The notes: generated from the sequence alone by a model not told the origin. Shown: positions 806 to 35,023, numbered from the stretch's first letter. The stretch is DNA of 64,000 nucleotides from Phallusia mammillata (GCA_965637545.1 OZ281501.1:18910001-18974000); one strand, 5' to 3'. A program made the numbers and translations.

Positions 806-2831
806 TTAAAGAAAATAAGAAACACACGCTGCTATAAGACAGATTAGAAATGACACAATTACAAAAGCTTCACGTTTCATTTTCTGATAAGTTGGGTCGT
901 TTTTCACCCGGTCATCGTATATTGTTGCTCCTTGATTTTTGTGTGGAAACGGACGATCTGGGATTGGAAGGTTTAAGAAGTTGCACAATGGTTCCCATCC
1001 TTCCTTTACGCTGTACACAAGCAACCTGTCCTTGGGAGCATTCTGGAAACAAACAAAAAATCGAACAACAAAGCATCCAGCAACAATATTTCAGTAACTC
1101 ACCATGAGAACAGCTGCATGATGTTGTCTGTATCTCACTGTCCGCAAGATGGCACTGTCGGGCCACTTTGTAAAAGGGAAAAGAGGTCGAGGCCCTTCTA
1201 TAATCCCAACTGCAATGGAACAATAAAATAGGAAAGGAATTGTCTAGTTTGTTTAATCAGAAGTATATATATATATTAATTTACGTTTTAAGATATTTGT
1301 TTCATGGCAGATGGTGGGAAAATGTAACATAGATCGCAATAACTTTTTCAACCTAGCTGGCTTACCGTCCAACAAAACATATTTAAACAAATCTGTAATC
1401 AAACTAATGTTGTGATATTTTTACTCAAACCTAGTAAGAAATTTCACTCAGACTAGAACAGTGGTTCTCAACCTTTTTGCCTTTGCGGACCCCTTTTGGT
1501 ACTGTGAAGCTTGTCGCGGACCCTTTGAAGGTTTTGGTAATTTTGTCTTTTTTTTATTAACAAGCAACCCGAAAAAGGTGCAGAATATACCAACCACGTT
1601 TGGTCCAGGACCAAAATTTCAATTATTTTGACTGGGCTGCGACATCCGAACTCAATAATAAAGAGCATTGTGATGTGACGTTGTTTGCCACTGAAAATTT
1701 ACCTCTGTTGCATCACAATGGGTTAAAATGTCACAATGCATTTTGGTTTGTCGCCTAGGAAGAACGATTTTAAACAAGTTTCATGCTATTTTAAAACGGT
1801 GAGACATATTTTTTTTAAATAGAGCTTTATCAATATCGTTGTCTGCAAAATTAGGAAGTTGTCGCGGACCCCCTGAAAACGCTTCGGACCCCCGGTTGAG
1901 AACCACTGGATGAGAACAATGGTGGGAAACTTTTTTATTCATGATGGTTCGAAGGGGCCGCATTGAGTGTGTTTTTCATGTTATTTCTTGGTTTAGGTTT
2001 CTTAAACTGTTCAAAGTAAGTTAACATAAAAGGTACAACAAAGGCCACATAAGTCCACGAGTGTTTGACTTGAAGGCCACATGTGTTGTTGTTGTTGTTG
2101 TTCTGATACTTACGAAATGTTTGAAGGAATTTGAAAAACCTCCATCCAGTTGGTGAAAACATGAGAAGGAAATTACTAGATGTGTTGTTTGCCATCGCAG
2201 TGTGCTGGTTCATTGCGCTACAAACCAGGCTTTTCTCATCCCGGTTGGTGTAAACTATCTGCAAATGATGAACAGTGAACAACACAATGAGAAAATTGTA
2301 CCAAGAAGTCAATTCACTTCAACTTAACAACTTAATTCATAGCGTCACAATGGCACTGCACAATTGTCAAGGAAAAAGCTACGCAACGTTGAAAAGTCAT
2401 GGAGCGCAAACAGTGCATGTCACAATCGGTGGATCATGACTACATGCGCTGCAGCCAGACCGTACTTGAAAGAAAAGTAGCCTCTACTCAATTTAAATAA
2501 ATTTGTTTTGAAGGTTGTACCTTGGCCTCTGGAAAAGCTTCAGCCAGTTGCTCCCAAAAATTGTAGGTTGGGTAATCAGTGACGGCATCGACATCTTTGT
2601 AAGACTCACGAATATCATCCAACGTCGCCTTCCCATCAATGTAATCATACCAAACCTGCGTGGAAAATAACTCACTTTTTCAGCACGGCTTAAAACAAAA
2701 AAACTAAATACCTGACGATGATAAAGAAAGTTTTCCATGCTGTCGTGCACTGTAAGTCCCAATATTCGTAAAGCTTCTGCCATTGTTTTAGTTCCAGTCT
2801 TTGCTACTCCTGCCATTATTACCTTCATCAT
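806..2831 (-). CDS. Sulfotransfer_4-like (Schistosoma-type) sulfotransferase, copy 1, C-terminal tail anchor
   Basis: Exons 2712-2831, 2521-2655, 2114-2258, 1103-1209, 806-1042, all GT-AG and in frame (about 247 aa). Contains GVAKTGT (5'-PAPS loop), AVTDYP, TNRDEKS (3'-PAPS), EGWEPLCNFL and PFPHKN, and ends in hydrophobic AFVIVSFLICLIAACVSYFL*. Confidence 0.85.
1459..1908. mobile_element. hAT (Charlie-like) MITE in intron 3 of copy 1
   Basis: TIRs CAGTGGTTCTCAACC...GGTTGAGAACCACTG. Degenerate 8-bp TSD gactagaa/gatgagaa. The paralogous intron of copy 6 (about 20170-20190) lacks the insert. Confidence 0.8.
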
Positions 2832-4673
2832 GTACCAAGAAAGTCAAATCCTATTTTTTTAAAAACTGAACAGTTTTGAATTACACAGAGAAAAAGTAAA
2901 GAAGTTGACTATTCCAGACAACTATTCCAACATCTTGAGCTGCAGACAATGAACACTGTTTCGACCTATAACAGCGGTTTCCAACCTGTGGGTCGCCTGA
3001 CAATTTGCCTGGGTTCGGCTAAAGCAGTGGTTCCCCAATGATTTTAGGCAATGGACTACTAGCTTCATAAAATAAACCCAGTTTTTTTTAATTAATAATA
3101 CTTATGCTCCCATTAATTCACAAAATTGCGGCTTTCTGAATGGTTAAAATCCCAATCTTCTACAAAATTACTTCGAAATAAGTGGACAGTCAATCTTTTT
3201 TCTTCGCTAACTTGATAATTAAGCTCTAAACTTTAGCCATTTTCAGCCACATTATCAAACCGAGCATTGCAACAACAAATTTACATTCGTTACGTTTATT
3301 CAGTCACATTTGGTGATTTTTTTCAACCACAAACCATGAGCTTGGCTGTGTTTATGTTAATTGATGTACGGGTGGTAACGTTGCGCCTGTTTGATACAGA
3401 GAAAATTGTGGCAACAATCAAATGCTTCGACCAATCAAATTTATCGCCTGTATTCAATTTCTGTTTGGAACCGCATCGTACAATTTGCCTTTCTGTAATT
3501 TTTCATTTATTACCACAAGGTTTTAACCGATGGGGAACCGTGTATATCAAAACTTATTCCACCAACCTATCCGAATAACAGCGTAGCTGCATCTTTCCAC
3601 AAATTGTAGCCTTACCTTTCTCGCGCTACATAACGTCCCAACGTTGCACAGCTATTTCCAGCTTGGTGAATATTTTAGCGCCGTTTTGATGCTGCGAATT
3701 GTATCGCCACCTGAAATCAATTCAATGCAACTCAACCAGGGTCGGTGAACCGCACAACGAAATTCGACAACGCCTGCGTAATAACGCTTGATTGACAAAC
3801 CATATCCAAACCAAACTTGAGGTTGGCATCAGTGTGAATTTGCGGTGTTACTTGGAGAAATAAGTTCTGTTGCTTAAAGAGTTTTTTTTTCTTATCGGGT
3901 ATATTTCTTCTTTCTGATTTGTTAAAATCCGACACATTGCGTAACACTGTTTCTTAATTTATAAACTTTGGCAATCTCTGGAAACAAAATCACAAACTCG
4001 TTTCACTCAAACTGCCTAAAGCGAGTGGATGTTCAATATCATATAGAGTTGTATCCCAGGAAATCCCGGGTTTGGACAGAAACTTTCCCACTTTTATCCT
4101 AAAACTCCAACCCAATGTCAACTCAACACGTTGAAGCAGTATACATGACGTCAGTTTACAACGTTTTATTCATCCCACAATCTATGTGTGACGGTTAGTC
4201 AGGAAAACTTGCATTTATTGTGGATGTTCACAGTTTTACAGGATAAAACTGATGTTCTTACAACGACTTGTATTGGGGATTAACCATATTTTTGCATGTT
4301 AACTTTGACCAACTTTTTAAAGTAATCTATAAAATTACTTTATCTTCGATTTTTTTCATAAATATTTTTTTTATAATTTTTTAGTTATTCAGATGCCTTT
4401 CAGATGTCGACGATTTTCCAATAAAATGGGTCGTGGGTTCGGATAGAAGTTGACCGTGCTTGGATATTTGTCGATTTCGAGCAACATCACGATCTCAGAT
4501 GTCGCATGAGCCGAACCAGAAAGTAATCTTGCCATTCAAGCACACGTGTTGAAGTTTTATTCGTCGAAACGTTGCGTGACGAAGCAACTCTGTAGCACGA
4601 ATCAGCAAATACATAAGCATTATACGCCATTACATTCTCATTATTTGGTCGAATGGTGACATTTAACACAGAG

Positions 4674-6699
4674 TTAAAGAAAATAAGAAACACACGCTGC
4701 TATAAGACAGATTAGAAATGACACAATTACAAAAGCTTCACGTTTCATTTTCTGATAAGTTGGGTCGTTTTTCACCCGGTCATCGTATATTGTTGCTCCT
4801 TGATTTTTGTGTGGAAACGGACGATCTGGGATTGGAAGGTTTAAGAAGTTGCACAATGGTTCCCATCCTTCCTTTACGCTGTACACAAGCAACCTGTCCT
4901 TGGGAGCATTCTGGAAACAAACAAAAAATCGAACAACAAAGCATCCAGCAACAATATTTCAGTAACTCACCATGAGAACAGCTGCATGATGTTGTCTGTA
5001 TCTCACTGTCCGCAAGATGGCACTGTCGGGCCACTTTGTAAAAGGGAAAAGAGGTCGAGGCCCTTCTATAATCCCAACTGCAATGGAACAATAAAATAGG
5101 AAAGGAATTGTCTAGTTTGTTTAATCAGAAGTATATATATATATTAATTTACGTTTTAAGATATTTGTTTCATGGCAGATGGTGGGAAAATGTAACATAG
5201 ATCGCAATAACTTTTTCAACCTAGCTGGCTTACCGTCCAACAAAACATATTTAAACAAATCTGTAATCAAACTAATGTTGTGATATTTTTACTCAAACCT
5301 AGTAAGAAATTTCACTCAGACTAGAACAGTGGTTCTCAACCTTTTTGCCTTTGCGGACCCCTTTTGGTACTGTGAAGCTTGTCGCGGACCCTTTGAAGGT
5401 TTTGGTAATTTTGTCTTTTTTTTATTAACAAGCAACCCGAAAAAGGTGCAGAATATACCAACCACGTTTGGTCCAGGACCAAAATTTCAATTATTTTGAC
5501 TGGGCTGCGACATCCGAACTCAATAATAAAGAGCATTGTGATGTGACGTTGTTTGCCACTGAAAATTTACCTCTGTTGCATCACAATGGGTTAAAATGTC
5601 ACAATGCATTTTGGTTTGTCGCCTAGGAAGAACGATTTTAAACAAGTTTCATGCTATTTTAAAACGGTGAGACATATTTTTTTTAAATAGAGCTTTATCA
5701 ATATCGTTGTCTGCAAAATTAGGAAGTTGTCGCGGACCCCCTGAAAACGCTTCGGACCCCCGGTTGAGAACCACTGGATGAGAACAATGGTGGGAAACTT
5801 TTTTATTCATGATGGTTCGAAGGGGCCGCATTGAGTGTGTTTTTCATGTTATTTCTTGGTTTAGGTTTCTTAAACTGTTCAAAGTAAGTTAACATAAAAG
5901 GTACAACAAAGGCCACATAAGTCCACGAGTGTTTGACTTGAAGGCCACATGTGTTGTTGTTGTTGTTGTTCTGATACTTACGAAATGTTTGAAGGAATTT
6001 GAAAAACCTCCATCCAGTTGGTGAAAACATGAGAAGGAAATTACTAGATGTGTTGTTTGCCATCGCAGTGTGCTGGTTCATTGCGCTACAAACCAGGCTT
6101 TTCTCATCCCGGTTGGTGTAAACTATCTGCAAATGATGAACAGTGAACAACACAATGAGAAAATTGTACCAAGAAGTCAATTCACTTCAACTTAACAACT
6201 TAATTCATAGCGTCACAATGGCACTGCACAATTGTCAAGGAAAAAGCTACGCAACGTTGAAAAGTCATGGAGCGCAAACAGTGCATGTCACAATCGGTGG
6301 ATCATGACTACATGCGCTGCAGCCAGACCGTACTTGAAAGAAAAGTAGCCTCTACTCAATTTAAATAAATTTGTTTTGAAGGTTGTACCTTGGCCTCTGG
6401 AAAAGCTTCAGCCAGTTGCTCCCAAAAATTGTAGGTTGGGTAATCAGTGACGGCATCGACATCTTTGTAAGACTCACGAATATCATCCAACGTCGCCTTC
6501 CCATCAATGTAATCATACCAAACCTGCGTGGAAAATAACTCACTTTTTCAGCACGGCTTAAAACAAAAAAACTAAATACCTGACGATGATAAAGAAAGTT
6601 TTCCATGCTGTCGTGCACTGTAAGTCCCAATATTCGTAAAGCTTCTGCCATTGTTTTAGTTCCAGTCTTTGCTACTCCTGCCATTATTACCTTCATCAT
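4674..6699 (-). CDS. Sulfotransfer_4-like sulfotransferase, copy 2 (identical to copy 1)
   Basis: Exons 6580-6699, 6389-6523, 5982-6126, 4971-5077, 4674-4910. Same translation as copy 1. Confidence 0.8.
5327..5776. mobile_element. hAT MITE (duplicate of 1459-1908)
   Basis: Same TIRs and sequence at +3868. Confidence 0.8.
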
Positions 6700-7969: not shown

Positions 7970-8158
7970 AAATAACAAACCTGCGTGGGAAATAACTAAC
8001 TTTCTTATCAAGGTTCAAAATGCCACAAACAACCGAAACACCTGACGATGATGTCTAAAATGTTCCATGGTGTCGTGCACTGTAAGTCCCAATATTCGTA
8101 AAGCTTTTGCCATTATTTTTGTTCCAGTTTTTCCTGCTCCAGCCATTATTACCCTCAT
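7970..8158 (-). pseudogene. Truncated sulfotransferase copy 3 (exon 1, intron 1 and a few bases of exon 2)
   Basis: MRVIMAGAGKTGTKIMAKALRILGLTVHDTMEHFRHHRQ at 8042-8158. After the exon-2 acceptor the sequence jumps straight into the intergenic spacer. Confidence 0.8.
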
Positions 8159-9050: not shown

Positions 9051-10103
9051 CTAAAGAAAATAAGAAACGCATGCTGCCATAAGACAAAATAACAATGACA
9101 CAATTACAAAAGCTTCACGTTTCATCTTCTGAAATGTTGGGTCATTTTTAAGCCACTTGTCATATATTGTTGCTCCGTGATTTTTGTGTGGAAACGGTTG
9201 GTTTGGAATTGGAAGGTTTAAGAAGTTACACAATGGTTCCCATCCTTCCTTCACGCTGCACACAAGCAACCTGTCTTTGGGAGCGTTCTGGTATAAATAT
9301 TAATGCAAATGAAGTTTGCAAAGTACTTATTTAGTAACAATATTTACAACTCACCATGAGAACAGCTGCGTTATGTTCTCTGTATCGTATTGTCCACACA
9401 TTTGCCCTAAAGTACCAGTTCGCAAATGGGAAAGAAGCCACGTGTTCTCCAAAGATGATTGTGACTAAATAAAATGAATAACGCCAGTTAGTTTTGCTTT
9501 AAACAGTGGTGTATTAAAATCGTTTTTAACAGTTTTACAAGATGTTGCTCTTACTGGTTTTGTTGAGAAAGAAAGATCCCTTTTGACACTTTGAATCTTA
9601 CTAAAATGGTAAAGGAATTTGAAAAATTTCCTTCCAGTTGGTGTAAACATGTACAGAAAATTGTTTGTTTTGTTGCGGGACATTTCAATGTGCTGGTTCA
9701 TTACGCTGCGAATGAAGCCCTTCTCATCCCGTTGTGTTAGAACTATCTGAAAACAACACACAATAGTAAACAAGCCTAATCAAATGACAGATGTACCTTT
9801 GCCTCTGGAAAAGCTTCGGCCAGTTGCTCCCAAAAGTAAAAGGTTGGAACATCAGTGACGGCATCGACATCTTTGTAAGACTCACGAATATCACCCAACG
9901 TCGCCTTCCCATCAATGTAATCATAACAAACCTGCGTGGGAAATAACTAACTTTCTTACCGATGTTAATCGAAATAACCGAAATACCTGTCGATGGTGTC
10001 TAAAGTTTTCCATGGTGTCGTGCACTGTAAGTCCTAATATTCGTAAAGCTTCTGCCATTGATTTGGTTCCAGTTTTCGACACTCCAGCCATGATTACCTT
10101 CAT
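9051..10103 (-). CDS. Sulfotransfer_4-like sulfotransferase, copy 4
   Basis: Exons 9987-10103, 9797-9931, 9602-9746, 9355-9464, 9051-9287, in frame. Has VTDVPTFYFW and a divergent exon 4 (ITIIFGEHVASFPFANWYFRANVW). Confidence 0.85.
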
Positions 10104-11196: not shown

Positions 11197-12377
11197 TTAT
11201 ATAAAACAAAAAACGCACGCTGCCACAAGACAGATTAACAATGATACAATTATGAAGGCTTCGCGTTTCATTTTCTGATATGTTGGGTCGATTTTAAGCC
11301 GGTCGTCGTATATTGTTGCTCCGTGATTTTTATGTGGAAACGGTTGGTTTGGGATTGAAAGGTTTAAGAAGTTGCACAATGGTTCCCATCCTTCCTTTAC
11401 GCTGTAGGCAAGCAACCTGTCCTTGGGAGCGTTCTGAAAACAAATTGATTCACAAAGTAATCGACTCATCAAGTTTAAAGCATTAAAATTTAAACAACTC
11501 ACCATGAGAACATTTGAATTATGTTCTCTGTATTTTATTGCCCACATGAGCTTACTGAAGGGCCAGTTTGTAAATGGAAAAAGAGGTGGAGGGCCTTCAA
11601 ACATCGCCACTACAAGAGTGAAACAAAATTTAACCGTTAAACAGGATATTGAAAAGTTTGGACATTGAAAAGCATCCGTCAAACCAGTACATTTGATTTT
11701 GTTTCGAAACTTACTAAAAATACGATAGAATTGGAACAATTTCCATCCAGTTGGGGAAAAAGTGAAAAGAAAATTTTGTTTCGTGTTGTTAGCCATCGCA
11801 ATATGTTGGTTTTCTAGACTTCGAAGATAACTCTTCTCTTCTCGTTGTGTCAGAATTATCTAAAAACGAAACACAGTGATAAAATATAAACATAATTGAA
11901 CTAAAAATGTTTTCACTGATATCCGAAGCATTATTTCGAAAATATTGTATTCTTTTCATACGGCCCAATGTTAACGTAACGCTTTATGAGGCGTGACTAT
12001 GTTGACTCAGGCAGGCACACATGGGTCCTATACATGTTCATACATGTTCAGATAGTAATGGTACCTTGGCCTCTGGAAAAGCTTCGGCCAGTTGCTCCCA
12101 AAGGTGGTAAGTCGGATAACCAATGATGGCATCGACATCTTTGTAAGATTCACGAATATCATCCAACGTCGCCTTCCCATCAATGTAATCATAACAAACC
12201 TGCGTGGCAAATAAACAACTTTTTCACCGAGGTTTAAAATGCCACCAATAACCGAAATACCTGTTGATGATAGAGAAAGTTTTCCATGGTGTCGTGCACT
12301 GTAAGTCCCAATATTCGTAAAGCTTCTGTCATTGATTTTGTTCCAGTCTTTGATAATCCTGCCATTATAACCTTCAT
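11197..12377 (-). CDS. Sulfotransfer_4-like sulfotransferase, copy 5
   Basis: Exons 12261-12377, 12065-12199, 11715-11859, 11503-11609, 11197-11433, in frame. Has AIIGYP in place of AVTDxP. Confidence 0.85.
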
Positions 12378-15207
12378 CTTTAACGATTGGTAACTTTAAA
12401 TCCTACCTTTACAGGAGCTTAATATATTTTTTCTGGAAACAAATAAATTGCACTCCAACATTTGAATTAACATTTCTTAAACAACGGAAATGATTCAAAA
12501 TCGGCTCCAAACGCGCAACTGAGATTTCAATTTAACTAAGACTCGCCAAGTCTGCAAATAACTGCTCAACACACAGACTACTACACGAGCCTCATTGGAA
12601 AACTAACGTAAAAACATTACCGCAACAATACATCAAAAAATGCCAGAAACTGTCGCTTCTGTATTTTCGTTTCAACAGGAAATCAGCAAGCTTCTGCATT
12701 GTGATGTGTTTCAGTTTATACAATTGCATCACTCATTTTTTTAGAACTACTTAACAACCAGTGAATAAGGGTTGGAAAATGAGTTTCACGTCTTGACAGT
12801 TCAATAAACCTAATTTCACGTTAAAACGATCAGAATATATCAACCCTAAATCGACATTTTTGCTTCAAATCTTGCAACTGACACTGCTTTCAAATATACT
12901 AGAACTCATAGATTGTTAAAAATAACTCGCCCTATGCGTTTGAGTGCACAACACAGAGACTAGTATAAAAACCTCTTTGGAAATCAACCGAAAAACAGTA
13001 ATGCAATCACAAATTACGTCAAAAAATGCCGGACATCGGTAAAACGTCTGTAATTAGTTTTCTTTACAACACGAAATCAGCAAGCTTCTTTGTTGTTTGT
13101 GTTTCAGTTTTTTCAATTGTATCCCTCAATTTTTTGAGACTTGTTTTCATTGCGGTATATGCATTAGTTTCAGTATGTACAGCAGCACCTATTATAATCG
13201 ATGCTATGAGACTATTTCGATAACTTCCCACTGTGTTCGTATTGAATGTTACATCGAGGAATAAAGGCATTTCCGCAATGCTCGTTTGGACTTTTTACGA
13301 AGGGTTCTTGTAACAATTTTTATTGCGGAAGAAAATATTTTCTACAGCATTGCATGTGGTTCACTAAAAAATCGTTTTCGTTTTTTTTCTCTGCTTATCG
13401 CTCAAACAAAATCTTACGTTAATGCAGATGTAGATGATTATGCTAATTATTGCGTGAGTTCACTAGTTCTTTATTGCTTTTGTGTAGGAATTATGACTTT
13501 TAGCTAAAGTTAAATTACATTATGAAGATAAATCCCGCCTATAAACAAAACCTAGTACCACTCAACCAAGTGATTTTAATGAAAATAACACACAAACAAT
13601 AATGACACACAAGACATAAGGTTAGAACATTCAACTGCAAAAAACAACAGCAATCTGACACTCAGCTCAAAGTAACTGCATTCAACAAGCGCACTGTACA
13701 ACTGCCTCGTTTACAACACTTTCCAACATAACATTAAACAAGGACATATATGCACAATCTGGTGGGCGTAAAATGAAACATGAAATTGGCGTGCCCTCAA
13801 AGCGATGTTATAACTTATACTTATAAGAGAATAATTACGATTAGATAATTACATGAAACTAGCAGGCTTTGAAACACAACGTTTGTAGCTGAATTTGACA
13901 ATGTTAGGCCACAGAAGATATCTCCCAGGTTCAGCGTGGCCAGTCCTGTCCTGTGAGCAAATGTTGACCTGCCCTGAGGGCAAATTGCGTGACTTTGTCT
14001 GACCTTGTGTCTTTGTACAGATAGCTAGGAGATCGGTGAAAGTTTGTTATAAACAAACATGTTGGTTTGACGCAACATGTGCATAAGTTTCATTATTGTC
14101 TTTTCTTTACTTTACCGAAGTTTAGGGTCGATACGGGATTAGATCTCACACCCTTGTGGTCGATACGGGATTGGAACTCACAACCTTGTATTATCAGCTT
14201 GGTCGTTTTGGTAGTGAATAATTTAAACTTGATGCTTTTTTCTTAACGACGGTTTTAAAGTCAAAAGGTTGCGCTGTTTGAAAGTGGAAAAAAGCAAAAA
14301 GAGGCCGACCGTATTAGCTGAACAGTTCTTTTACAAAAAATAAGAAACACACGCTGCCGTAAAACAGCTTCAACAGTTGCATGAAAAAAAAAACGTAACA
14401 ATACCTGAATCGAGATGCATTAAAAAGCAGATAGTCACCCCGTTATTTTGCGCTGATAAAAATTTGTGGCGGGGTTTTGGTTTAGAACAAAATCCAACTT
14501 AACAAGCAAAAAATGTTGAAAGCAATTGATTTATTTGAATAAGAAACTAATGAGCCTTGTTAACCCACAGTTAAAGCTCAACAACAAAATGCTGTTGCTG
14601 CTAGGTATAATATTAGGTTGTTAAAGTTGTGACGTATTAATTAAAACATTTTTCGGATCGGCAAACAGAACAAAGTGAACTGAATAGACCGAATTTAGGC
14701 TAGCAAGTGTACCTATGAGTTCCAATGTAGTCAAGTTGGGTAGTAATTTCAATGTTTTCGCGTTGAAATAGTGTATTGATTTGTCACGTAGATTTATCTG
14801 CTAACGAATTTAAATTACATCACGCAGCAAACTTAGCTTTGTTTCGGTCTTTTTTCAAAACAGTTTTGTAATAGGGTCGGGTTTCAGGCCTTGTTGTTAG
14901 GCCCTTTATACAGCGCTACCACTGATTGTAACATAAATAAAGTAACTTAGAAAAAACCAACTAGAATTGTTAAAAACTTGGAAAGGCGTAAGTTTGGAAG
15001 AGAAAAAGCGACATGCTTTATTTTTCAAACGTTTCGCCAAATGCTCATGCCATTATCATGATCATGGGTATTTTCATTATTAAACTTATAAACAAATCTG
15101 TATGTAGCGTTCCAAGGTTGGTTGTGAAATTTGAAGGTTGTTTAGAGATTTCGCGCAACTGAATCTAAGAGCCACATGGGCAGCTGAAACAACTACATCA
15201 AATAGAT

Positions 15208-16993: not shown

Positions 16994-17401
16994 ATGTTCT
17001 TATTTCGTGCTTGTTTGTTGAGAAATTGAATTGAAATATGTCCATAAAATTCTTGCTGCTAATTTTCTACGTTTTCTTGCATTATGTCTAATGATATTTC
17101 GCCAGTATAGGCCTAAGTTTGTTTCGTTATTTTCATCGTTGCTTGTTGTATAATTTATAAAAAACAAAACAGGCCTTCCTGCACAAGTTTTCCTCATTGT
17201 GGGTTTTGAAAATAGTAGAAGGCGCCAAACACATTTGTAGAAACGAAAACCTCTGGATTTAGACTTCAAAGCGGTTTTGGTTCGAACCCCGCCATAACCG
17301 TTTTTAAAGTTCACCTCAGAGATGATATGTTAACAGATGTATCGTGGTCCTTATATAAATATTAAACGATGTTTTTCGCTGTTCTTGTATATCATCTAAA
17401 G

Positions 17402-19469: not shown

Positions 19470-20905
19470 ATGAAAGTTATAATGGCTGGGTTTTCGAAAA
19501 CTGGAACCAAAACAATGGCAGAAGCTTTACGAATATTGGGACTTACAGTGCACGACACCATGGAAAACTTTAGACACCATCGTCAGCTATTTCAGGTGTT
19601 TGTGGAATTTAAAACCTTGGCGAGAAAGTTAGTTATTTGCCACGCAGGTTTGGTATGATTACATTGATGGGAAGGCGACGTTGGATGATATTCGTGAGTC
19701 TTACAAACATGTCGATGCCGTCACTGATTACCCAACCTACTATTTCTGGGAGCAACTGGCCGAAGCTTTTCCAGAGGCCAAGGTACACCCCTTACTAACT
19801 TTTCTATCAGTAAGTTAATCATTGAGTTGTTTACTGTTCATCTTTGTCAGATAGTTTACACCAACCGGGATGAGAAAAGCCTGGTCCGTAGCGCAATGAA
19901 CCAGCACACTGCGATGGCTAACAATACAACAAGTAATTTCCTTCTCATGTTTTCACCAACTGGATGGTGGTTTTTCAAATTCCTTCAAACATTTCGTAAG
20001 TTTCAGAACAACATCACATTTGGCCTTCAAGGAAAATGCTTGTTGACTGATGTGGCCTTCATTGTACAGTTTGTTAACTTATTTTAAACGGTTACAGAAA
20101 CCTAAACCAAAAAATAACATGGAAAACACACTCAATGCGGCCACTTCGAGCCATCATAAACAAACAAATTTCCCACCAATGTCTGAGTGAAACATCCCAC
20201 TAGGTGTGAGTAAAAATTACACACTATTGATTTGATTGCAGATTTGTCTAAATTTGCTTTGTTAGACGATAAACCAGCGAGTTTGAAAAAGTTATTAGGG
20301 CTTGTGTTACAATTTCCCACCATCTGTAATTTAACAAATATGATTTCGTTTATGTTTTGCTGGTCTAAGACACATATTGTACCGTTGCAGTTGGGATTAT
20401 AGAAGGACCTCGACCTCTTTTTCCTTTTACAAAGTGGCCCGATAGCGCCATCTTGCGTACAATAAGATACAGACAACATCATGCAGCTATTCTCATGGTG
20501 AGGTGCTGAAATTCTGTGGCTTAACACTTTGCAGACAATCTTGTTATCTCTCAGAACGCTCCCAAGGGCAGGTTGCTTGTGTACAGCGTGAAGGAAGGAT
20601 GGGAACCATTGTGCAACTTCTTAAACCTTCAAATACCAGATCGTCCGTTTCCACACAAAAATAGTGGAGCAACTCTATTCGATGATCGAATTAATAATGA
20701 CTCATCATTTCAGAGGATGAAACGTGAAGCTTTTGTAATTGTGACATTGATATTCTGTTTAATGGCAGCGTGCGTTTCTTATTTTTTCTTAAAGACACAA
20801 TTTAGTGAAGGAATAAACCACGCAACTGCAGCTGAAGCAATGCATTTTGGCGTTAAAAACTTTGTTGAAGGCGCGTTTACACCACAAGCGGCAAAGCAAA
20901 GTTAA
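19470..20905 (+). CDS. Sulfotransfer_4-like sulfotransferase, copy 6 (mutated exon-1 donor, extended C-terminus)
   Basis: Exons 19470-19595 (cryptic donor; the usual donor at 19587 is CT), 19648-19782, 19851-19995, 20391-20497, 20555-20905. The last exon is 38 codons longer than in paralogs. Confidence 0.7.
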
Positions 20906-22266: not shown

Positions 22267-23670
22267 ATGAAGGTTATAGCTGCAGGAGTATCAAAGACTG
22301 GAACCAAATCAATGGCAGAAGCTTTACGAATATTGGGACTTACAGTGCACGACAGCATGGAACACTACAAATACCATCGTCAGGTTTTTCAGTTATTTGT
22401 GGGTTTTTAAACTTTGGTGAGAAAGTTAGTTATTTCTCACGCAGGTTTGGTATGATTACATTGATGGGAAGGCGACGTTGGATGATATTCGTGAGTCTTA
22501 CAAACATGTCGATGCTGTCACTGATTTTCCAGTCCATATATTTTGGGAGCAACTGGCCGAAGCTTTTCCAGAGGCCAAGGTATAATCGTTAATCTAGCTG
22601 TGTTGCATCAGGTGGATCCAGTCGTGGGATTCATTTTTTTGTCAGCCGGTACTATTACAAAAGTCTTATTATGCCAACCGGTTCGCTGATATCATAAAAT
22701 TTAGTGAGACGGTTCTATAGAACCCACCACCCCTTTTGACCTTGTTTCCAGATAATCTTAACCCAACGAGATGAGAAGAGCTACATTCCCAGTGCAATGA
22801 AGCAGAGAATAGCATTAGCAAACAACAAATCATGTATATTCCTTTTCACCTTTTCTCCAACTGGATGGAAATATTTCAAATTCCTTCAAGTTTTTCGTAA
22901 GTTTTAAAAAATATTAAAAATATGTCATGTTTGAGTTAATGAAAACTGTTTCTATGACAAACATGGTAAGAGTAGTAAAACTTTCTTTAAAAACCTTTTA
23001 AGACTTGACTTGACTGGAGATTCGACTTATAGGATTCGTTACCCAACCCTGGTATAATGCAGTAAAGAGATAGGGTTTAAACGACAAATAGTTTTAGATT
23101 TGGCTTACCTAACGCTTGCAGAAAGCAAGTATGTTACGACATGCCAATAACGGACTGAAATGTAATTTAAGTGACAAACATAATAATAAGTAAATGGTCA
23201 AAACGGTAAATTAATCAATATTACGCAGTGACGTAAATTGGCAGTATATGGTAAACAGTATATTTGCAGTTGGTGTCATGGATGGACATCAACCTCTTTT
23301 CCCATTTACAAACTGGCCCTTCAGCGCCAGCTTGCGGGCAATAAAGTATAGACAACATAATGCAGCAGTTCTCATGGTGAGTTGCTGAAATGTTGAAGCT
23401 AAATATTTTGGAGACAATCTTGTTTCTTTCCAGAACGCTCCCAAGGAGAGGTTGCTTGTGTACAGCGTGAAGGAAGGATGGGATCCATTGTGCAACTTCT
23501 TAAACCTTCCAATCCCAAATCGTCCATTGCCACACAAAAATCACGGAGCAACAATATACAATGACCGGGTGAAAAACGACCCAACATTTCAAAAAATGAA
23601 ACGTGAAGCTTTTGTGATTGTGTCATTAATATTCTGTTTTATGGCCGCGTGCGTTTCTTATTTTCTTTGA
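22267..23670 (+). CDS. Sulfotransfer_4-like sulfotransferase, copy 7
   Basis: Exons 22267-22383, 22445-22579, 22752-22896, 23270-23376, 23434-23670, in frame. Has VTDFPVHIFW. Confidence 0.85.
22615..22730. mobile_element. Degenerate hAT MITE (CAGTGGTGGGATTC family) in intron 2 of copy 7
   Basis: Similar to 27634-27813 and 42227-42404. Ends are eroded. Confidence 0.6.
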
Positions 23671-24814: not shown

Positions 24815-25851
24815 ATGAAGGTTATAATGGCTGGAGCAGGAAAAACTGGAACCAAAACAATGGCTGAAGCTTTACGAATATTGGGACTTACAGTGCACGA
24901 CACCATGGAAACCTTTAGACACCATCGTCAGGTATTTCGGTTATTTGTAATTTCCAACCTTGGTGAGAAAGTTAGTTATTTTCCACGCAGGTTTGGTATG
25001 ACTACATTGATGGAAAGGCGACGTTGGATGATATTCGTGAGTCTTACAAACATGTCGATGCCGTTACACACTTTCCTGCCTATATATTTTGGGAGCAACT
25101 GGCTGAAGCTTTTCCAGAAGCAAAGGTACCATGCACAGTCAAGGTGTGTTGTTCTGCTACTGTGTGTTGTTTTTAGATAGTTCTAACCCAACGAGATGAG
25201 GAAAGTTACATTCGCAGCACAATGAACCAGCGTACCGCGATGGCCAACAACAAAACATGTATTTTTCTTTTTACATTTTCACCAACTGGTTGGAAGTATT
25301 TCAAATTTCTTCAAAGATTTAGTAAGTTCCGCAACAACTGTGCTTGTCAACAAAGCTATCGTAATACATTTGAAGACATATTTGTCTAAACTGAACAGCT
25401 GTGTCTACAACCACTCTTTATTGAACGGTCAAAATAATCACTTATTTCTTATAGTTGGAATAATCGAGGGACCTCGCCCACTTTTCCCATTTACAAACTG
25501 GCCCTTTAGTGCCATCCTGCGGAGAGTAAGGTACAGAGAACATCATGTAAATATTCTCATGGTGAGTTGCTGAAATTATGATGTTTTGCACTCTGTAAAC
25601 CGATTTGTTTCAAGAACGCTCCCAAGGGCAGGTTGCTTGTGTACAGCGTGAAGGAAGGATGGGAACCATTGTGCAACTTCTTAAACATTCCAATCCCAAA
25701 TCGTCCGTTTCCACACAAAAATCACGGAGCAACTGTTTTTGATGACCGGGTGAAAAACGACCCAACATTTCAGAAGATGAAACGTGAAGCTTTTGTAATT
25801 GTGTCATTACTCATCTGTCTTATGGCAGCCTGTGTTTCTTATTTTCTTTAA
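24815..25851 (+). CDS. Sulfotransfer_4-like sulfotransferase, copy 8
   Basis: Exons 24815-24931, 24991-25125, 25177-25321, 25455-25561, 25615-25851, in frame. Has VTHFPAYIFW. Confidence 0.85.
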
Positions 25852-26801: not shown

Positions 26802-26958
26802 NNNNNNNNNNNNNNNNNNNNNNNNNNNNNNNNNNNNNNNNNNNNNNNNNNNNNNNNNNNNNNNNNNNNNNNNNNNNNNNNNNNNNNNNNNNNNNNNNNN
26901 NNNNNNNNNNNNNNNNNNNNNNNNNNNNNNNNNNNNNNNNNNNNNNNNNNNNNNNNNN
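26802..26958. other. Assembly gap (157 N)
   Basis: Run of N. Confidence 1.
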
Positions 26959-28049: not shown

Positions 28050-29184
28050 ATGAAGGCAATAATGGCAGGAGTAGCAAAAACTGGAACCAAATCAATGGCA
28101 GAAGCTTTACGAATATTGGGACTTACAGTGCACGACACCATGGAACATTTTCTCTATCATCGTCAGGTATTTAGGTTGTTAATTGTGGGATTTTTAACCT
28201 TTTAGGTAATTTCCCACGCAGGTTTGTTATGATTACATTGATGGGAAGGACGTTGGATGATATTCGTGAGTCTTACAAACATGTCGATGCCGTCACTAGG
28301 TTACCAACTTTTCACTTTTGAGAGCAACTGGCCGAAGCTTTTCCAGAGGCCAAGGTAAAATTGTCAAACAAACTTAATTGTTTTACTACTTTAATGGTAA
28401 AAATAACGGCCCAAATAGATGCGAAGAGCATGTCGAGCCGTTATTTTCACCATTAAACTTATGAACAGATCCGTACATGCATATTTTACTACTGTTTGTA
28501 GTTTTCAGATAGTTCTAACCCAACGAGATGAGGAAAGCTACATTCGCAGTGCAGAGAACCAGAGAATGGCGCTGGTCAACAACAAGACATGCAGATTTCT
28601 TTACACATTTTCACTCACTGGGTGGAAGTTTTTCAAATTTCTTCAAAGATTGCGTAAGTTTCGTATGTGCCTGTGTCAGAAAAACGTTTTGATACGTTTG
28701 AAGATCTATTTCGTCTAAACTCAATAGCTGCATTTACCAACATTGTTTACTAATCGCCAAAATTTATTACTTAACTTTTCCAGTTGGAATAGTCGAGGGA
28801 CCTCGCCCACTTTTTCCATTTACAAACTGGCCTTTTAGTGCCATCCTGCGGAGAGTGAGGTATAGAGAACATAATGCAAATATTCTCACAGTGAGTTGTT
28901 GAAATTCTGATGCTTAACAATTTGCAGACAATCTTGTTTCCTTTCAGAACGCTCCCAAGGACAGGTTGCTTGTGTACAGCGTGAAGGAAGGATGGGAACC
29001 ATTTTGCAACTTCTCAAACCTTCCAATCCCAGATCAACCGTTTCCACACAAAAATTCTGGAGCAACAATATACGATGACCGGCTTAAAATCGACCCAACA
29101 TATCAGAAAATGAAACGTGAAGCTTTTGTAATAGTGTCATTGCTATTCTGTTTTATGGCAGCGTGTGTTTTTTATTTTGTGTAA
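28050..29184 (+). pseudogene. Sulfotransferase copy 9, pseudogene
   Basis: All five exons are present. Exon 2 has a 2-bp deletion (gggaaggacg vs gggaaggcgacg, about 28249) and a TGG>TGA nonsense codon at 28319-28321. Confidence 0.85.
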
Positions 29185-30100
29185 AGAACAGTTCAGCAAA
29201 TACGTACATCCTCAATCTGCATATCACTGAACTCTTATTTCTAGCAATGTTATTTTGTTTTGCCTCACGATCAAGTGTTTCTTAAATGTTGTTTAAAGAA
29301 AACTGTTGTTTTGGTTTACATTGTGATGTCACACAAAATGGGTGCTGTTCGGGCAAATAAAACCTCAGCACGTGTCCTTACATAATACTTGTACTTAAAC
29401 TTAGATAAAGTAGAAAAATACTGTAATAAACCTTATGCACCTAAGGTAATGAAAAACAAAAACATCAAGTCATTCGTCCTTAAGATGTTGAAATATACAT
29501 ATATTTTGCCTTAACAGCATGAGCAGTAGCTTATTCAAATAGAATCTTCCGTGCCCTTATGTAAAACGGTTTTCCTTGATGGATCAGAAAATCGGTCAAA
29601 GGGCAGCAAACTGAATGTTCAAATTTGGACAAGCAATAAACAAAGAACGAAAATGAAAACGATTTTTAGTGAACCACATGCAAAGGGTTGTACAAAATAT
29701 TTTATTTCGTGAACAAATTGTTACAAGAACCCTTCGTAAAAAGTTGAGCATTGCGGAAATGCCTTTATTCCTCGATGTAACCTTTAATGCGATCACAAAG
29801 ATAATGTCTAGTGTCATAGCATCAATAATAATAGGTTCTGCTGTACAAACTGGAACTGATGCATATACCACAACGAACAATTAGTCTCACACTAAAACAC
29901 GATGCAATACAGAAGGCGGTTGATTTCCTGTTGTAACGAAAATTAATTACAATTGGAAGCTACTACAAAACGTTTTACATTCGATTGACATTTTTTTGAT
30001 ATAATTTGTCACTGTGGTACAGCTTTTCCGTCAGTTCCTGTGTTCTTATGCTAGTCTGTAGGGCGAGTTAGGTTTATCGAACTATATCCGTGAGACGAGT

Positions 30101-30200
30101 GGGTAAAAAACGACCCAACATATCAGAAGATGAAACGCGAAGCTTTTGTAATAGTGTCATTGTTATTCTGTCTTAAGGCAGCGTGCATTTTTTTTGTGTA
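30101..30200 (+). pseudogene. Isolated 3' fragment of sulfotransferase exon 5
   Basis: Encodes KNDPTYQKMKREAFVIVSLLFCLKAACIFFV*. No upstream exons are nearby. Confidence 0.75.
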
Positions 30201-31010: not shown

Positions 31011-31082
31011 CATCCGCTGTAACAGAAATATAATTCATTTTTGACTTGATAAAGTGTTGTTGTCGAGATAAAGCCTAAAAAG

Positions 31083-32186
31083 ATGAAGGTAATAATGGCA
31101 GGATTGTCGAAAACTGGAACCAAAACAATGGCAGAAGCTTTACGAATATTAGGACTTACAGTGCACGACACCATGGAAAACTTTCTATATCATCAACAGG
31201 TATTTCGGTTATTTGTGCCATTTTAAACCTTGGTGAGAAAGTTAATTACTTGACACGCAGGTTTGTTATGATTACATTGATGGGAAGGCGACGTTAGATG
31301 ATCTTTGTGAGTCTTACAAAGATGTCGATGCCATCATTGGGTATCCGACTTACCACCTTTGGGAGCAACTAGCCGAAGCTTTTCCAGAGGCCAAGGTACC
31401 ATTACTAAATATCAACATGTATGGGACACATGTGTGCCTGCCTGAGTGAACAATCGGGTCGTTTGAAACGTTACCTTAACATTGGACACTATGAATTTTG
31501 TATTTTTTGTATTTTATCACTGTGTTTCGTTTTTAGATAATTCTGACACAGAGAGAAGAGAAGAGTTATCTTCGAAGTCTAGAAAACCAACATATTGCGA
31601 TGGCTAACAACACGAAACAAAATTTTCTTTTCACTTTTTCCCCAACTGGATGGAAATTGTTCCAATTCTATCGTATTTTTAGTAAGTTTCGAAACAAAAT
31701 CAAATGTACTGGTTTGATGGATGCTTTTCAATGTCCAAACTTTTCGAAATTCCTGTTTAACGATTGACTTTTGTTTCACTTTCGTAGTGGCGATGTTTGA
31801 AGGCCCTCCACCTCTTTTTCCATTTACAAAGTGGCCCTTCAGCAAGCTTATGTGGGCAATAAAATACAGAGAACATAATTCAAATGTTCTCATGGTGAGT
31901 TGCTCAAATGCTGTGGCTTTAATTTGCAGACAATCTTGTTTCCTTTCAGAACGCTCCCAAGGACAGGTTGCTTGTGTACAGCGTGAAGGAAGGATGGGAA
32001 CCATTGTGCAACTTCTTAAACCTTCCAATCCCAAATCAACCGTTTCCACACAAAAATAGTGGAGCAACAATATACGACGACCGGCTTAAAATCGACCCAA
32101 CTTATCATAAGATGAAACGTGAAGCTTTTGTAACTGTGTCATTGATGTTCTGTCTTGTGGCTGCATTTGTTTGGCATTTTCTTTAA
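31083..32186 (+). CDS. Sulfotransfer_4-like sulfotransferase, copy 10
   Basis: Exons 31083-31199, 31261-31395, 31537-31681, 31788-31894, 31950-32186, in frame. Exons 2-4 are nearly identical to copy 5 (AIIGYP). Confidence 0.85.
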
Positions 32187-33100: not shown

Positions 33101-33539
33101 GATCATGTGTTATAACACTTATATACATAAGCTATATAAAACTGAGGCAGACAACTGAAAAAACTGAAACACAATACAATACAAAAGCTTGTTGATTTCC
33201 TGTTGTAACGAAAATAATTACAATCGGAAACTAGTGCAAAAACGTTTTATCGGCGTCCGGCATTTTTTTGACATAATTTGTCATTGTGGTATTTCTTTCC
33301 TGTTAATTTAAAAAGTGGTTCACATACTAGTCTGTGTGTTGTCCGCTCGAACGTATAGGACGAATTTCTTTAAGTTGTGAGTTCCAGTTAATTTTAAGGC
33401 TGGATCAGTCGCAACACTTGAAGCTTTAAAGTTGATTTTAGGGTTGATATATTCTGATTTTTTTCAGCTTAAAGTTGGTTTATGGAACTGAGAAGCCGTG
33501 AAACTTATTTTCAAACTTGTTATTCACTGGTTGTGAAAG

Positions 33540-35023
33540 ATGAAGGTAATAATGGCAGGAGTATCTAAGACTGGAACAAAAACAATGGCAGAAGCTTTAC
33601 GAATATTGAGACTTACAGTGCACGACACCATGGAACATTTTCTCGATCATCGACAAGTATTTCGGTTATTTGTTGCATTTTAAACCTTGGTGAGAAAGTT
33701 AGTTATTTCCCACGCAGGTTTGGTATGATTACATTGATGGGAAGGCGACGTTGGATGATCTTCGTGAATCTTACAAAGATGTCGATGCCGTCACTGATTA
33801 CCCGATTTTCCACCTTTGGGAGCAACTGGTCGAAGTCTTTCCAGAGGCCAAGGTACTATCACTAACTATAGGGACCCATGTGTGCCTGCCTGAGTCAACA
33901 GTCACGCCACTTAAAACGTTACCTTAACATTGGGCCGTATGAAAACAACAAAAACTGAATGAAGAATACAAACTTTGAAGTTCGTGATATTGCTTGTGCA
34001 ATAATACTAATAAAACATTTCTAGTCAAATGCATTGATTTAATACTGTGTTTCGTTTTTAGATAGTTTTAACACAAAGAGATGAGAAAAGTTATCTTCGA
34101 AGCGTTGAAGACCACCTTGTAGCGATGGCTAACAACACAAAACTAAATTTGCTTTTCACTTTTTCACCAACTGGATGGAAATTGTTCCAATTCTATTGTA
34201 TTTTTAGTAAGTTTCGAAAGAAAATTGAGAGTTTAGAAAACCTGTGCTTGAACATGTATTAGCAGATGTGACTATTTTCACAACCAAAGCACTCACGGTG
34301 TTTTGCAATCTTGTTACATTCAATCTTAACATTTTAGACACAAGAGCTGAACAACCTTCGATCGTGAACACGTGTAATAAAACATGGCGGCCGTGAACAC
34401 AGCAACAAACAAACGTAACAATACAGATAGTGATCTCATAAATATTTAACTGATTTCTATATATTGTTCAACCAAATCAATGTATTAAGTAAGAAATCAA
34501 TCGGGTCTTTTTAGCCACCAATGCGATATTATAAGACATACCTTACTTCTTCAAGTCACTGAAGATTATTTTTCCAATTAAATAGTTTAACTATTGTTTT
34601 ACTTTCGTAGTGGCGATTTTTGAAGGCCCTCCGCCCCTTTTTCCATTTTCAAAGTGGCCCTTCAGCAAGCTCAGTTGGACGATAAGATACAGAGAACATA
34701 ATTCAAATGTTCTCATGGTGAGTTGCTGAAATTTTAATGCTTTAAACTTGATGAGACGATTACTTTGTGAACCGATTTGTTTCCAGAACGCACCCAAGGA
34801 CAGGTTGCTTGTGTACAGCGTGAAGGAAGGATGGGAACCATTGTGCAACTTCTTAAACCTTCCAATCCCAGATCGTCCGTTTCCACACAAAAATCACAGA
34901 GCAACAATATACGACGACCGGCTTAAAAACGACCCAACATTTCAGAAGATGAAACGTGAAGCTTTTGTAATTGTGTCATTGATGTTCTGTCTTGTGGCTG
35001 CATTTGTTTGGCATTTTCTTTGA
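33540..35023 (+). CDS. Sulfotransfer_4-like sulfotransferase, copy 11
   Basis: Exons 33540-33656, 33718-33852, 34062-34206, 34611-34717, 34787-35023, in frame. Has VTDYPIFHLW. Confidence 0.85.

What the first reader, a model, noticed from the sequence alone, without database searches (positions are those of the whole stretch)
806..35023. Birth-and-death cluster of at least 12 Schistosoma-type sulfotransferase loci in a chordate
Seen: 9 intact five-exon copies, 1 frameshifted pseudogene and 2 fragments, in two divergent arms, all with the same exon sizes (117/135/145/107/237 with minor exceptions). Known: GxxKTGT, TDxP, RD-x(n)-S and GWEPLCxFL are motifs of the Sulfotransfer_4 family typified by the Schistosoma oxamniquine-activating enzyme; this is not the classical vertebrate cytosolic SULT family. 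Inference: a lineage-specific small-molecule sulfation or detoxification system. Ascidians are known to make sulfated sterols (e.g. the sperm attractant SAAF) and alkyl sulfates, so this is a candidate enzyme family for such chemistry.
Basis: partly seen in the sequence, partly recalled or inferred. Interest (0 to 1): 0.75.

Follow-up and report, generated by a model that had tools for sequence, protein, structure and literature searches.

The report
Sea-squirt tail-anchored sulfotransferase gene cluster
A sea squirt (Phallusia mammillata) carries ten tandem copies plus four remnants of a Schistosoma-type small-molecule sulfotransferase gene; this is a real, lineage-specific expansion of a family already annotated in tunicates, and what it sulfates is unknown.

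Summary
Window 806-35023 carries ten full-length five-exon genes (117/135/145/107/237 nt). Four lie on the minus strand and six on the plus strand, head to head. There are also four relics, not two.

Eight loci have canonical splice sites and open frames (A and B encode the same protein). Copy E has a CT donor and a lost stop codon. Copy H is a clear pseudogene.

Exons match Pfam PF17784 (Sulfotransfer_4) in collinear order. A public P. mammillata protein, 98% identical to copy F, scores 180.7 bits over the whole profile. Its AlphaFold model matches Cpz8, SgdX2 and the Schistosoma sulfotransferases best.

All copies form one clade apart from the Ciona and Clavelina paralogs. Pairwise dN/dS is 0.15-0.41. 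Exons 1, 2 and 5 look homogenised by gene conversion. Exons 3-4 keep the duplication history.

Every copy ends in a 20-residue hydrophobic tail. This predicts a membrane-anchored, cytosol-facing enzyme, a trait shared widely in the family.

The N gap lies in the G-H spacer and touches no exon. Whether it hides another copy cannot be told.

Verdict: a new member of a known kind, of moderate interest. Other notes of this scan mention sulfotransferases elsewhere in this genome, but none describes this cluster.

The parts
806..2828 (-). Copy A, intact. Exons 2712-2828, 2521-2655, 2114-2258, 1103-1209, 806-1042. A second in-frame ATG lies 3 nt upstream, at 2829-2831.
   Evidence: GT-AG introns, 246-aa open frame; exons hit PF17784.
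4674..6696 (-). Copy B, intact, with a protein identical to A. Exons 6580-6696, 6389-6523, 5982-6126, 4971-5077, 4674-4910.
   Evidence: 1-3514 against 3878-7382 is identical except for a 9-bp indel and 2 mismatches at 563-577.
8042..8158 (-). Relic holding exon 1 only, most like copy G (91% nt), with a GT donor retained. It lies 70 bp from a 3'-flank-like segment (7755-7972), which suggests exons 2-5 were deleted.
9051..10103 (-). Copy C, intact and the most divergent. Exon 4 is 110 nt. Exons 9987-10103, 9797-9931, 9602-9746, 9355-9464, 9051-9287.
11197..12377 (-). Copy D, intact. The Asp of the TDxP motif is replaced by Gly (IIGYP). Exons 12261-12377, 12065-12199, 11715-11859, 11503-11609, 11197-11433.
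14332..14370 (-). Weak relic of the exon 5 tail.
   Evidence: nhmmer E 1.5e-3; tblastn E 0.84
19071..19154 (+). Degenerate exon 3 relic upstream of copy E.
   Evidence: nhmmer E 2.2e-5
19470..20905 (+). Copy E, doubtful. The intron 1 donor is CT, with a cryptic GT 9 nt downstream that would add Leu-Phe-Gln in frame. A 1-nt insertion before the stop codon extends the frame by 38 residues. Exons 19470-19586, 19648-19782, 19851-19995, 20391-20497, 20555-20905.
22267..23670 (+). Copy F, intact and 98% identical to the public P. mammillata protein CAB3262602.1 (P0001). Exons 22267-22383, 22445-22579, 22752-22896, 23270-23376, 23434-23670.
24815..25851 (+). Copy G, intact. The Asp of the TDxP motif is replaced by His (THFP). 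Exons 24815-24931, 24991-25125, 25177-25321, 25455-25561, 25615-25851.
26802..26958 (.). Assembly gap (N) in the G-H spacer. No exon touches it.
28050..29184 (+). Copy H, a pseudogene. It has a 2-nt deletion and a TGA stop in exon 2, and TD changed to TR. Exons 28050-28166, 28222-28354, 28509-28653, 28784-28890, 28948-29184.
30081..30194 (+). Relic of the 3' part of exon 5 (linker and hydrophobic tail).
31083..32186 (+). Copy I, intact, with Asp replaced by Gly as in D. Exons 31083-31199, 31261-31395, 31537-31681, 31788-31894, 31950-32186.
33540..35023 (+). Copy J, intact. Exons 33540-33656, 33718-33852, 34062-34206, 34611-34717, 34787-35023.
12378..19469 (.). Central 7-kb spacer between the two head-to-head arms. 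It holds two weak relics and no Pfam-recognisable ORF.

Best explanation
This is a tandem gene cluster that arose in the Phallusia lineage. It encodes 246-residue PAPS-dependent O-sulfotransferases of the S. mansoni type (Pfam PF17784). Residues 1-208 form the catalytic domain. This domain has a P-loop for the 5'-phosphosulfate (G7-x-x-K-T-G-T13), Arg90 and Ser98 for the 3'-phosphate, and Asp66, which is the counterpart of SmSULT Asp91 that hydrogen-bonds the acceptor hydroxyl. There is no signal peptide. Residues 227-246 form a hydrophobic helix that ends at the C-terminus. I therefore infer a tail-anchored enzyme whose active site faces the cytosol, where PAPS is made, at a membrane surface. 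There it would sulfate small hydrophobic hydroxyl-bearing acceptors; whether these are endogenous lipids or sterols, or xenobiotics, is undecided. The cluster grows by tandem duplication and inversion. It loses copies by frameshift, splice-site loss and deletion. It exchanges exons 1, 2 and 5 among paralogs by gene conversion, while exons 3-4 stay copy-specific. In SmSULT these two exons correspond to the helices around the acceptor pocket. Shown here: gene structures, family, fold, motifs, monophyly, purifying selection and the mosaic identity pattern. Inferred: catalytic activity, membrane topology and substrate class.
For: Gene models have GT-AG introns and open frames. PF17784 is hit exon by exon in collinear order and over the full length of P0001 at 180.7 bits. 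P0001 is 98% identical to copy F, has the same 246-residue length and reads identically across all four exon junctions. The nearest PDB sequences are Cpz8 (9kf1), SgdX2 (8y9p) and SmSULT (4mua). The AlphaFold2 model has pLDDT 96.1 and a helix at 218-245. Foldseek's top 19 hits all belong to this family (E 6e-13 to 5e-10), and the next best hit is at 6e-4. The TDxP Asp aligns with the D of 'TTDLP' in SmSULT, which is Asp91-Leu92 after the +2 chain offset. That residue hydrogen-bonds the accepting hydroxyl (PMC4618941; PMC12414012). Characterised relatives are PAPS-dependent enzymes acting on small molecules; for example Cpz8 sulfates phenols (PMC11677658). The window copies and P0001 form one clade (SH-aLRT 99) that excludes the Ciona and Clavelina paralogs. 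dN/dS is 0.15-0.41 for all 28 pairs and 0.25 for the tail segment. Exons 3-4 define the groups (A,E), (D,I,J) and (F,G,H), with C alone. Exons 1, 2 and 5 are 86-97% identical among all copies with scrambled nearest neighbours. For example, D and I are 99% identical in exon 3 but only 87% in exon 5. The hydrophobic tail is kept in all copies and in tunicate, cnidarian and flatworm homologs and some bacterial ones. Fungal PF17784 proteins LdrG and LdrH sit on lipid droplets (bioRxiv 10.1101/2022.11.24.517872).
Against: I could not check whether the public record behind P0001 is an mRNA. No enzymatic data exist for any tunicate member. Three intact copies lack the Asp (G has His; D and I have Gly), so not all may catalyse the same chemistry. 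Positions equivalent to the SmSULT pocket are not significantly more variable than others (1,191 of 10,000 random sets reach the observed mean). No 15-codon window reaches pN/pS of 1. Diversifying selection on the pocket is therefore not shown. The tail-anchor topology rests on hydrophobicity and a predicted helix only.
Confidence: 0.8

Rival explanations
1. This is the reader's suggestion: a dedicated biosynthetic role. The paralogs would make ascidian sulfated natural products, such as the egg-derived sulfated steroid sperm attractant SAAF or alkyl sulfates, with copy turnover tracking species-specific chemistry.
For: A membrane-anchored, cytosol-facing design would suit sterol or long-chain alcohol acceptors. 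SAAF is a sulfated steroid released by ascidian eggs (PMC8835908, PMC10668965). Within my paper searches, no sulfotransferase for SAAF turned up. The clade is lineage-specific.
Against: Nothing ties these genes to gonad expression or to sterols. The family is expanded independently in Clavelina and is present in cnidarians, flatworms and bacteria, which fits a general conjugation role equally well. One or two enzymes would suffice for SAAF, so ten are not needed.
Confidence: 0.1
2. The sulfate would serve as a transient leaving group or donor rather than as the end product, as with SgdX2, SmSULT acting on oxamniquine, and Cpz8. On this reading the cluster drives dehydration, alkylation or sulfate-relay chemistry.
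For: The nearest solved relatives are titled or described in this way: 'bacterial activating sulfotransferase SgdX2' (8y9p), the Schistosoma enzymes (which I recall activate the prodrug oxamniquine), and Cpz8 in caprazamycin synthesis (PMC12414012; PMC11677658).
Against: These are three distant members at 24-29% identity. Nothing in the window, such as a partner enzyme gene, points to a pathway. The neighbours are only a nuclear-receptor gene and unassigned ORFs.
Confidence: 0.07
3. The copy number is partly an assembly artefact. A and B would be one gene or two haplotypes laid in tandem, and the array around the N gap would be mis-joined.
For: A and B are identical over about 3.5 kb including introns. 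The same spacer repeat flanks the gap. From my own knowledge, not tested here, ascidian genomes are highly heterozygous.
Against: The A and B units differ by a 9-bp indel and 2 mismatches, and identity decays gradually at the unit edge (3515-4103, about 50 differences). That looks like a conversion tract between real neighbours, not an exact assembler duplicate. The other eight copies differ by 7-30% in protein sequence, so they cannot be artefacts.
Confidence: 0.15
4. The cluster is largely a graveyard. Most copies would be untranscribed or non-catalytic, and only copy F, which has a public protein record, would function.
For: Only one P. mammillata protein of this clade is in the protein collection. 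Copies E and H are damaged. Copies D, G and I lack the Asp.
Against: dN/dS is 0.15-0.41 in every pair, including D-I at 0.15. Splice sites and frames are intact at eight loci. The collection seems to hold few P. mammillata records at all, and no contig encodes even P0001.
Confidence: 0.08

Closest known systems
Schistosoma mansoni sulfotransferase SmSULT-OR (PDB 4MUA/4MUB), the type member of PF17784 / IPR040632
   Same: Same Pfam family and fold (Foldseek E about 4e-11, TM about 0.7). It shares the P-loop, the RD...S motif, the GWEPLCxFL motif and the TDxP Asp that corresponds to Asp91.
   Different: Identity is only about 25%. The ascidian proteins end in a 20-residue hydrophobic tail right after the domain. 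Here the genes form a ten-copy, five-exon tandem array. Three copies have replaced the Asp.
Streptomyces Cpz8 (PDB 9KF1/9KF2) and SgdX2 (PDB 8Y9P), bacterial PF17784 enzymes of natural-product pathways
   Same: These are the best sequence and fold matches (phmmer E 2e-22 and 7e-21; Foldseek E 6e-13 and 3e-12; TM to target 0.82-0.85). They are PAPS-type sulfotransferases that act on small molecules.
   Different: They are soluble bacterial proteins of 212-256 residues encoded inside biosynthetic gene clusters. No partner enzymes lie next to the ascidian array.
Predicted PF17784 paralogs of other tunicates (Ciona intestinalis LOC108950450 and LOC101242769; more than 20 Clavelina lepadiformis loci)
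   Same: They are 38-45% identical, of similar length (245-285 aa), carry the same domain and mostly have a C-terminal hydrophobic segment. All are annotated only as uncharacterised or as 'sulfotransferase family protein'.
   Different: They fall outside the Phallusia clade, so the expansions are independent in each lineage. Many carry 15-25 extra residues after the hydrophobic segment.
Vertebrate cytosolic SULTs (Pfam PF00685, Sulfotransfer_1)
   Same: Both use PAPS and have a P-loop fold, and both are presumed to have a phase-II-like conjugation role. Both occur as tandem, lineage-specific gene expansions.
   Different: This is a different family: P0001 scores 16.2 bits against a cut-off of 22. 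The catalytic base is Asp rather than His. The ascidian proteins are predicted to be membrane-anchored rather than soluble.
Aspergillus oryzae LdrG/LdrH (PF17784 proteins on lipid droplets)
   Same: Same domain family, and both associate with a lipid surface from the cytosolic side (bioRxiv 10.1101/2022.11.24.517872).
   Different: The fungal proteins bind through amphipathic helices, not a terminal hydrophobic anchor. They regulate droplet number and size, and no enzymology has been reported for them.

Membership tests
Pfam PF17784 Sulfotransfer_4 (InterPro IPR040632, S. mansoni-type sulfotransferase) | Profile match above the curated gathering score (22.8 bits) over the whole domain | tested here: met
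   Exons of A and G score 33-35, 34-35, 13-19 and 55-59 bits at collinear profile positions, and exon 4 is silent. P0001, 98% identical to copy F, scores 180.7 bits over profile 1-214 of 215.
Pfam PF17784 Sulfotransfer_4 | N-terminal P-loop for the 5'-phosphosulfate, G-x-x-(K/R)-T-G-T | tested here: met
   G7, K10, T11, G12 and T13 are invariant in all ten exon 1 copies plus the relic. They are nearly invariant across 81 family members.
Pfam PF17784 Sulfotransfer_4 | R-D-x(7)-S segment (3'-phosphate binding) after strand 84-88 | tested here: met
   R90 is invariant and S98 is at least 90% conserved across 81 members. Both are present in all intact copies. D and I read R-E-E instead of R-D-E (alignment).
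Pfam PF17784 Sulfotransfer_4 | Asp of the T-D-x-P motif (SmSULT Asp91), which contacts the acceptor hydroxyl | tested here: inconclusive
   The Asp is present in A, B, C, E, F and J. It is His in G, Gly in D and I, and Arg in pseudogene H. It is at least 90% conserved in the family. Equivalence to Asp91 rests.
Pfam PF17784 Sulfotransfer_4 | C-terminal E-G-W-E-P-L-C-x-F-L motif | tested here: met
   G15, W16, P18, C20, N21 and F22 of exon 5 are invariant in nine copies. G183, W184, P186 and C188 are invariant in 81 members.
Pfam PF17784 Sulfotransfer_4 | Fold like the solved members | tested here: met
   The AF2 model has pLDDT 96.1. The top 19 Foldseek hits are Cpz8, SgdX2 and the Schistosoma SULTs (E 6e-13 to 5e-10).
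Pfam PF17784 Sulfotransfer_4 | PAPS-dependent sulfate transfer to an acceptor hydroxyl | not testable with these tools
   This needs recombinant protein and an assay.
Classical cytosolic SULT (Pfam PF00685 Sulfotransfer_1) | Profile match above the gathering score (22 bits) | tested here: not met
   P0001 scores 16.2 bits, E 0.007.
Tail-anchored membrane proteins | No signal peptide, and a single hydrophobic helix within about 30 residues of the C-terminus | tested here: met
   The P-loop strand starts at residue 2. The last 20 residues are hydrophobic (Kyte-Doolittle 2.5 over 19 residues, ending at the C-terminus). The model has a helix at 218-245. The tail is conserved in all copies.
Tail-anchored membrane proteins | Post-translational membrane insertion with the N-domain in the cytosol | not testable with these tools
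   This needs localisation and protease-protection experiments.

The most novel reading that the evidence does not exclude
The array encodes membrane-tethered, cytosol-facing sulfotransferases that make the species-specific sulfated sterols (SAAF-type sperm attractants) or alkyl sulfates of ascidians. On this reading, gene turnover in the cluster underlies species-specific gamete chemistry. The Asp-less copies D, G and I, which are still under purifying selection, would use a different catalytic base or act as non-catalytic partners.
Probability: 0.07. Interest if true: 0.75.

Novelty: new member of a known kind. Interest (0 to 1): 0.33.

Why it matters
This cluster gives a complete, curated map of one tunicate expansion of a sulfotransferase family that seems to be missing from vertebrates. 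No vertebrate appeared among the 94 hits. A tunicate genome paper lists tunicate-only orthogroups with sulfotransferase domains (PMC8704543).

The map covers the intact, doubtful and dead copies, the conversion mosaic, the natural Asp-to-His and Asp-to-Gly variants, and the predicted tail anchor. It yields a ready set of paralogs for recombinant substrate screens. Such screens bear on ascidian sulfated metabolites and on phase-II-like detoxification in the sister group of vertebrates.

As it stands, this is an ordinary lineage-specific gene family expansion.

Tried and rejected
- **Contig look-up.** An exact look-up of contigs encoding P0001 found nothing.
- **Diversifying selection.** No 15-codon window has pN/pS of 1 or more. 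Positions equivalent to the SmSULT pocket are not significantly more variable. The idea of positive selection on the pocket was dropped.
- **Mirror-image duplication of the two arms.** This was rejected. From the centre outwards the groups run D, C, relic, B, A on one arm and E, F, G, H, relic, I, J on the other, and these do not mirror each other.
- **A P-loop kinase identity.** Adenylate and gluconate kinase appear only at Foldseek E of about 1e-2, against 1e-12 for the family.
- **Paper searches.** The 'SgdX2' search matched only grant numbers. The search for tail-anchored sulfotransferases returned nothing.
- **The big representative search.** It was not run. The family scan had settled the identity, and that library carries no taxonomy, so it could not test absence from vertebrates.
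- **Joined models.** Searches went exon by exon by reference, or used the public protein P0001. Exons were concatenated only inside local scripts, for translation, identities, dN/dS and the tree.

Full report
**What is there.**

The window is AT-rich (36-40% G+C) and has one N run at 26802-26958. I built one gene model by eye from the minus strand at 806-2831. I then mapped it back by tblastn, by exon-wise nucleotide alignment and by exon profile HMMs.

This finds ten complete five-exon units. A, B, C and D lie on the minus strand at 806-12377. E, F, G, H, I and J lie on the plus strand at 19470-35023. The two arms are transcribed away from a 7-kb central spacer.

Exon sizes are 117/135/145/107/237 nt. 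The exceptions are exon 4 of C (110 nt), exon 2 of H (133 nt) and the read-through exon 5 of E. Every intron is GT-AG except intron 1 of E.

Four further relics exist:
- exon 1 at 8042-8158(-);
- the 3' part of exon 5 at 30081-30194(+);
- a degenerate exon 3 at 19071-19154(+);
- a weak exon 5 tail at 14332-14370(-).

No copy lies in 35024-64000.

**State of each copy.**

A, B, C, D, F, G, I and J have open 246-247 codon frames.

A and B encode the same protein. Their DNA (1-3514 against 3878-7382) is identical apart from a 9-bp indel and two mismatches at 563-577. Identity decays over 3515-4103. This looks like a very recent duplication or a conversion tract between neighbours. An assembly effect cannot be excluded without reads. 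The repeat runs off the left end of the window, so more copies may lie upstream.

E has its intron 1 donor changed from GT to CT. A GT 9 nt downstream would keep the frame and add three residues. A 1-nt insertion in the last T run removes the stop codon and adds 38 residues. I call E doubtful.

H has a 2-nt deletion and a TGA stop in exon 2, so it is a pseudogene.

The exon 1 relic at 8042-8158 lies 70 bp from a segment (7755-7972) that matches the 3' flank of A and B. This suggests an internal deletion of exons 2-5.

**The assembly gap.**

The gap lies 951 nt after G's stop codon and 1,092 nt before H's start. No exon or reading frame depends on it.

The same spacer element lies on both sides (26241-26336 and 27051-27145; both match 23898-24177 in the F-G spacer). 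The join is therefore not verifiable and a further unit could be hidden.

**Family.**

I searched exon by exon by reference. Exons 1, 2, 3 and 5 of A and G hit Pfam PF17784 (Sulfotransfer_4) at profile positions 1-37, 43-92, 93-141 and 175-214.

A word search with a stop-free ORF of copy D returned P0001, a 246-residue Phallusia mammillata protein (UniProt A0A6F9DHI4, CAB3262602.1). It is 98% identical to my model of copy F and reads identically across all four exon junctions. This identifies the species, validates the gene model and gives a full-length reference.

P0001 scores 180.7 bits on PF17784 over the whole profile. It falls below the cut-offs of Sulfotransfer_1 and Sulfotransfer_3. PF17784 is InterPro's 'Sulfotransferase, S. 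mansonii-type' (PMC11625862).

Against the PDB, the exon profiles and P0001 find only Cpz8 (9kf1), SgdX2 (8y9p) and the Schistosoma sulfotransferases. An AlphaFold2 model of P0001 built on 81 homologs has mean pLDDT 96.1. Foldseek ranks those same proteins first (E 6e-13 to 5e-10). The next hits are tyrosylprotein and heparan sulfotransferases, at E 6e-4 and above.

**Active-site residues.**

The P-loop (G7, K10, T11-G12-T13), R90, S98 and the GWEPLC motif are conserved in all intact copies and in the family.

The Asp of T-D-x-P aligns with the D of 'TTDLP' in SmSULT. The chain index runs two ahead of the native numbering, as Pro16, Val127-Val128 and Asp144 confirm. This residue is therefore Asp91-Leu92. 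Asp91 hydrogen-bonds the accepting hydroxyl of oxamniquine (PMC4618941; PMC12414012).

This Asp is kept in A, B, C, E, F and J. It is His in G and Gly in D and I. D and I also read R-E-E for R-D-E. D and I are nevertheless under purifying selection (dN/dS 0.15).

**C-terminal tail.**

The domain ends at residue 208. Residues 227-246 are uniformly hydrophobic and end the protein, preceded by K-M-K-R-E. The model makes residues 218-245 one helix. No N-terminal signal exists, since the P-loop strand starts at residue 2.

I therefore infer a tail-anchored protein with its catalytic domain in the cytosol. The trait is not special to this cluster. Most tunicate and cnidarian homologs, a flatworm homolog and some bacterial ones have a comparable segment, while shorter bacterial members lack it. 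Fungal members bind lipid droplets through amphipathic helices.

**Evolution.**

In a tree of 50 family members, the eight distinct window proteins and P0001 form one clade (SH-aLRT 99) on a long stem. This clade stands apart from the Ciona and Clavelina paralogs, which have expanded independently. That tree used the quick method, and some long outgroup branches are flagged.

Pairwise dN/dS is 0.15-0.41 for all pairs.

Exon-wise identities show a mosaic:
- Exons 3 and 4 define the groups (A,E), (D,I,J) and (F,G,H), with C alone. Identity between groups is only 66-80%.
- Exons 1, 2 and 5 are 86-97% identical among all copies, with scrambled nearest neighbours.
- D and I are 99% identical in exon 3 but 87% in exon 5.
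- Synonymous divergence is 0.19 in the domain part of exon 5 and 1.0 in exon 3.

This is the signature of gene conversion in the terminal exons on top of birth and death.

I found no evidence of positive selection. No window reaches pN/pS of 1, and pocket-equivalent positions are not significantly more variable.

**Function.**

Characterised relatives are PAPS-dependent enzymes acting on small molecules. The best-supported reading is membrane-tethered O-sulfation of small hydrophobic acceptors.

Nothing here discriminates between xenobiotic conjugation and the biosynthesis of ascidian sulfated sterols or alkyl sulfates. No paper I found names a SAAF sulfotransferase. A tunicate genome paper lists tunicate-only orthogroups with sulfotransferase domains as uncharacterised (PMC8704543).

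**Limits.**
Exons were joined only inside local scripts, for translation, identity, dN/dS and the tree.
- The large representative search was not used.

**Earlier notes of this scan.**
- One follow-up had named the genome Phallusia mammillata (s1-408678), which my result confirms independently.
- Other notes mention sulfotransferases elsewhere in this genome, but none describes this cluster.

Noticed in passing
window 60928-61200 (+): This ORF contains a nuclear-receptor C4 zinc-finger exon (Pfam PF00105, E 5.7e-8).
   Followed up: partly
window 27634-27813; 53534-53712 (-); 42227-42404 (-): A dispersed repeat of about 180 bp, 87-92% identical, occurs in the G-H spacer and twice outside the cluster. 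It is probably a small mobile element.
   Followed up: no
window 23898-24177; 26155-26429; 27042-27236; 10656-10899 (-): A spacer element of about 250 bp recurs downstream of several copies. It occurs twice in the G-H spacer, once on each side of the N gap.
   Followed up: partly
window 12065-12199 (-), 31261-31395 (+), 24991-25125 (+): Copies D and I replace the family's nearly invariant Asp (SmSULT Asp91) with Gly, and copy G replaces it with His. D and I also change R-D-E to R-E-E. All three genes are intact and under purifying selection.
   Followed up: partly
window 1-805 and the left edge: The A/B repeat unit (period about 3,870 bp) is already running at position 1. The array may therefore continue to the left of the window.
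   Followed up: no
window 39251-39769 (-): A 172-codon ORF rich in Asp-Tyr-Arg repeats and Ser/Thr has no Pfam match. It could be a low-complexity exon or a chance ORF.
   Followed up: partly
intron 1 of all copies (e.g. window 24932-24990): The first intron, 55-64 nt long, is nearly as conserved among paralogs as the flanking exons. This is consistent with conversion tracts that span exons 1-2.
   Followed up: partly
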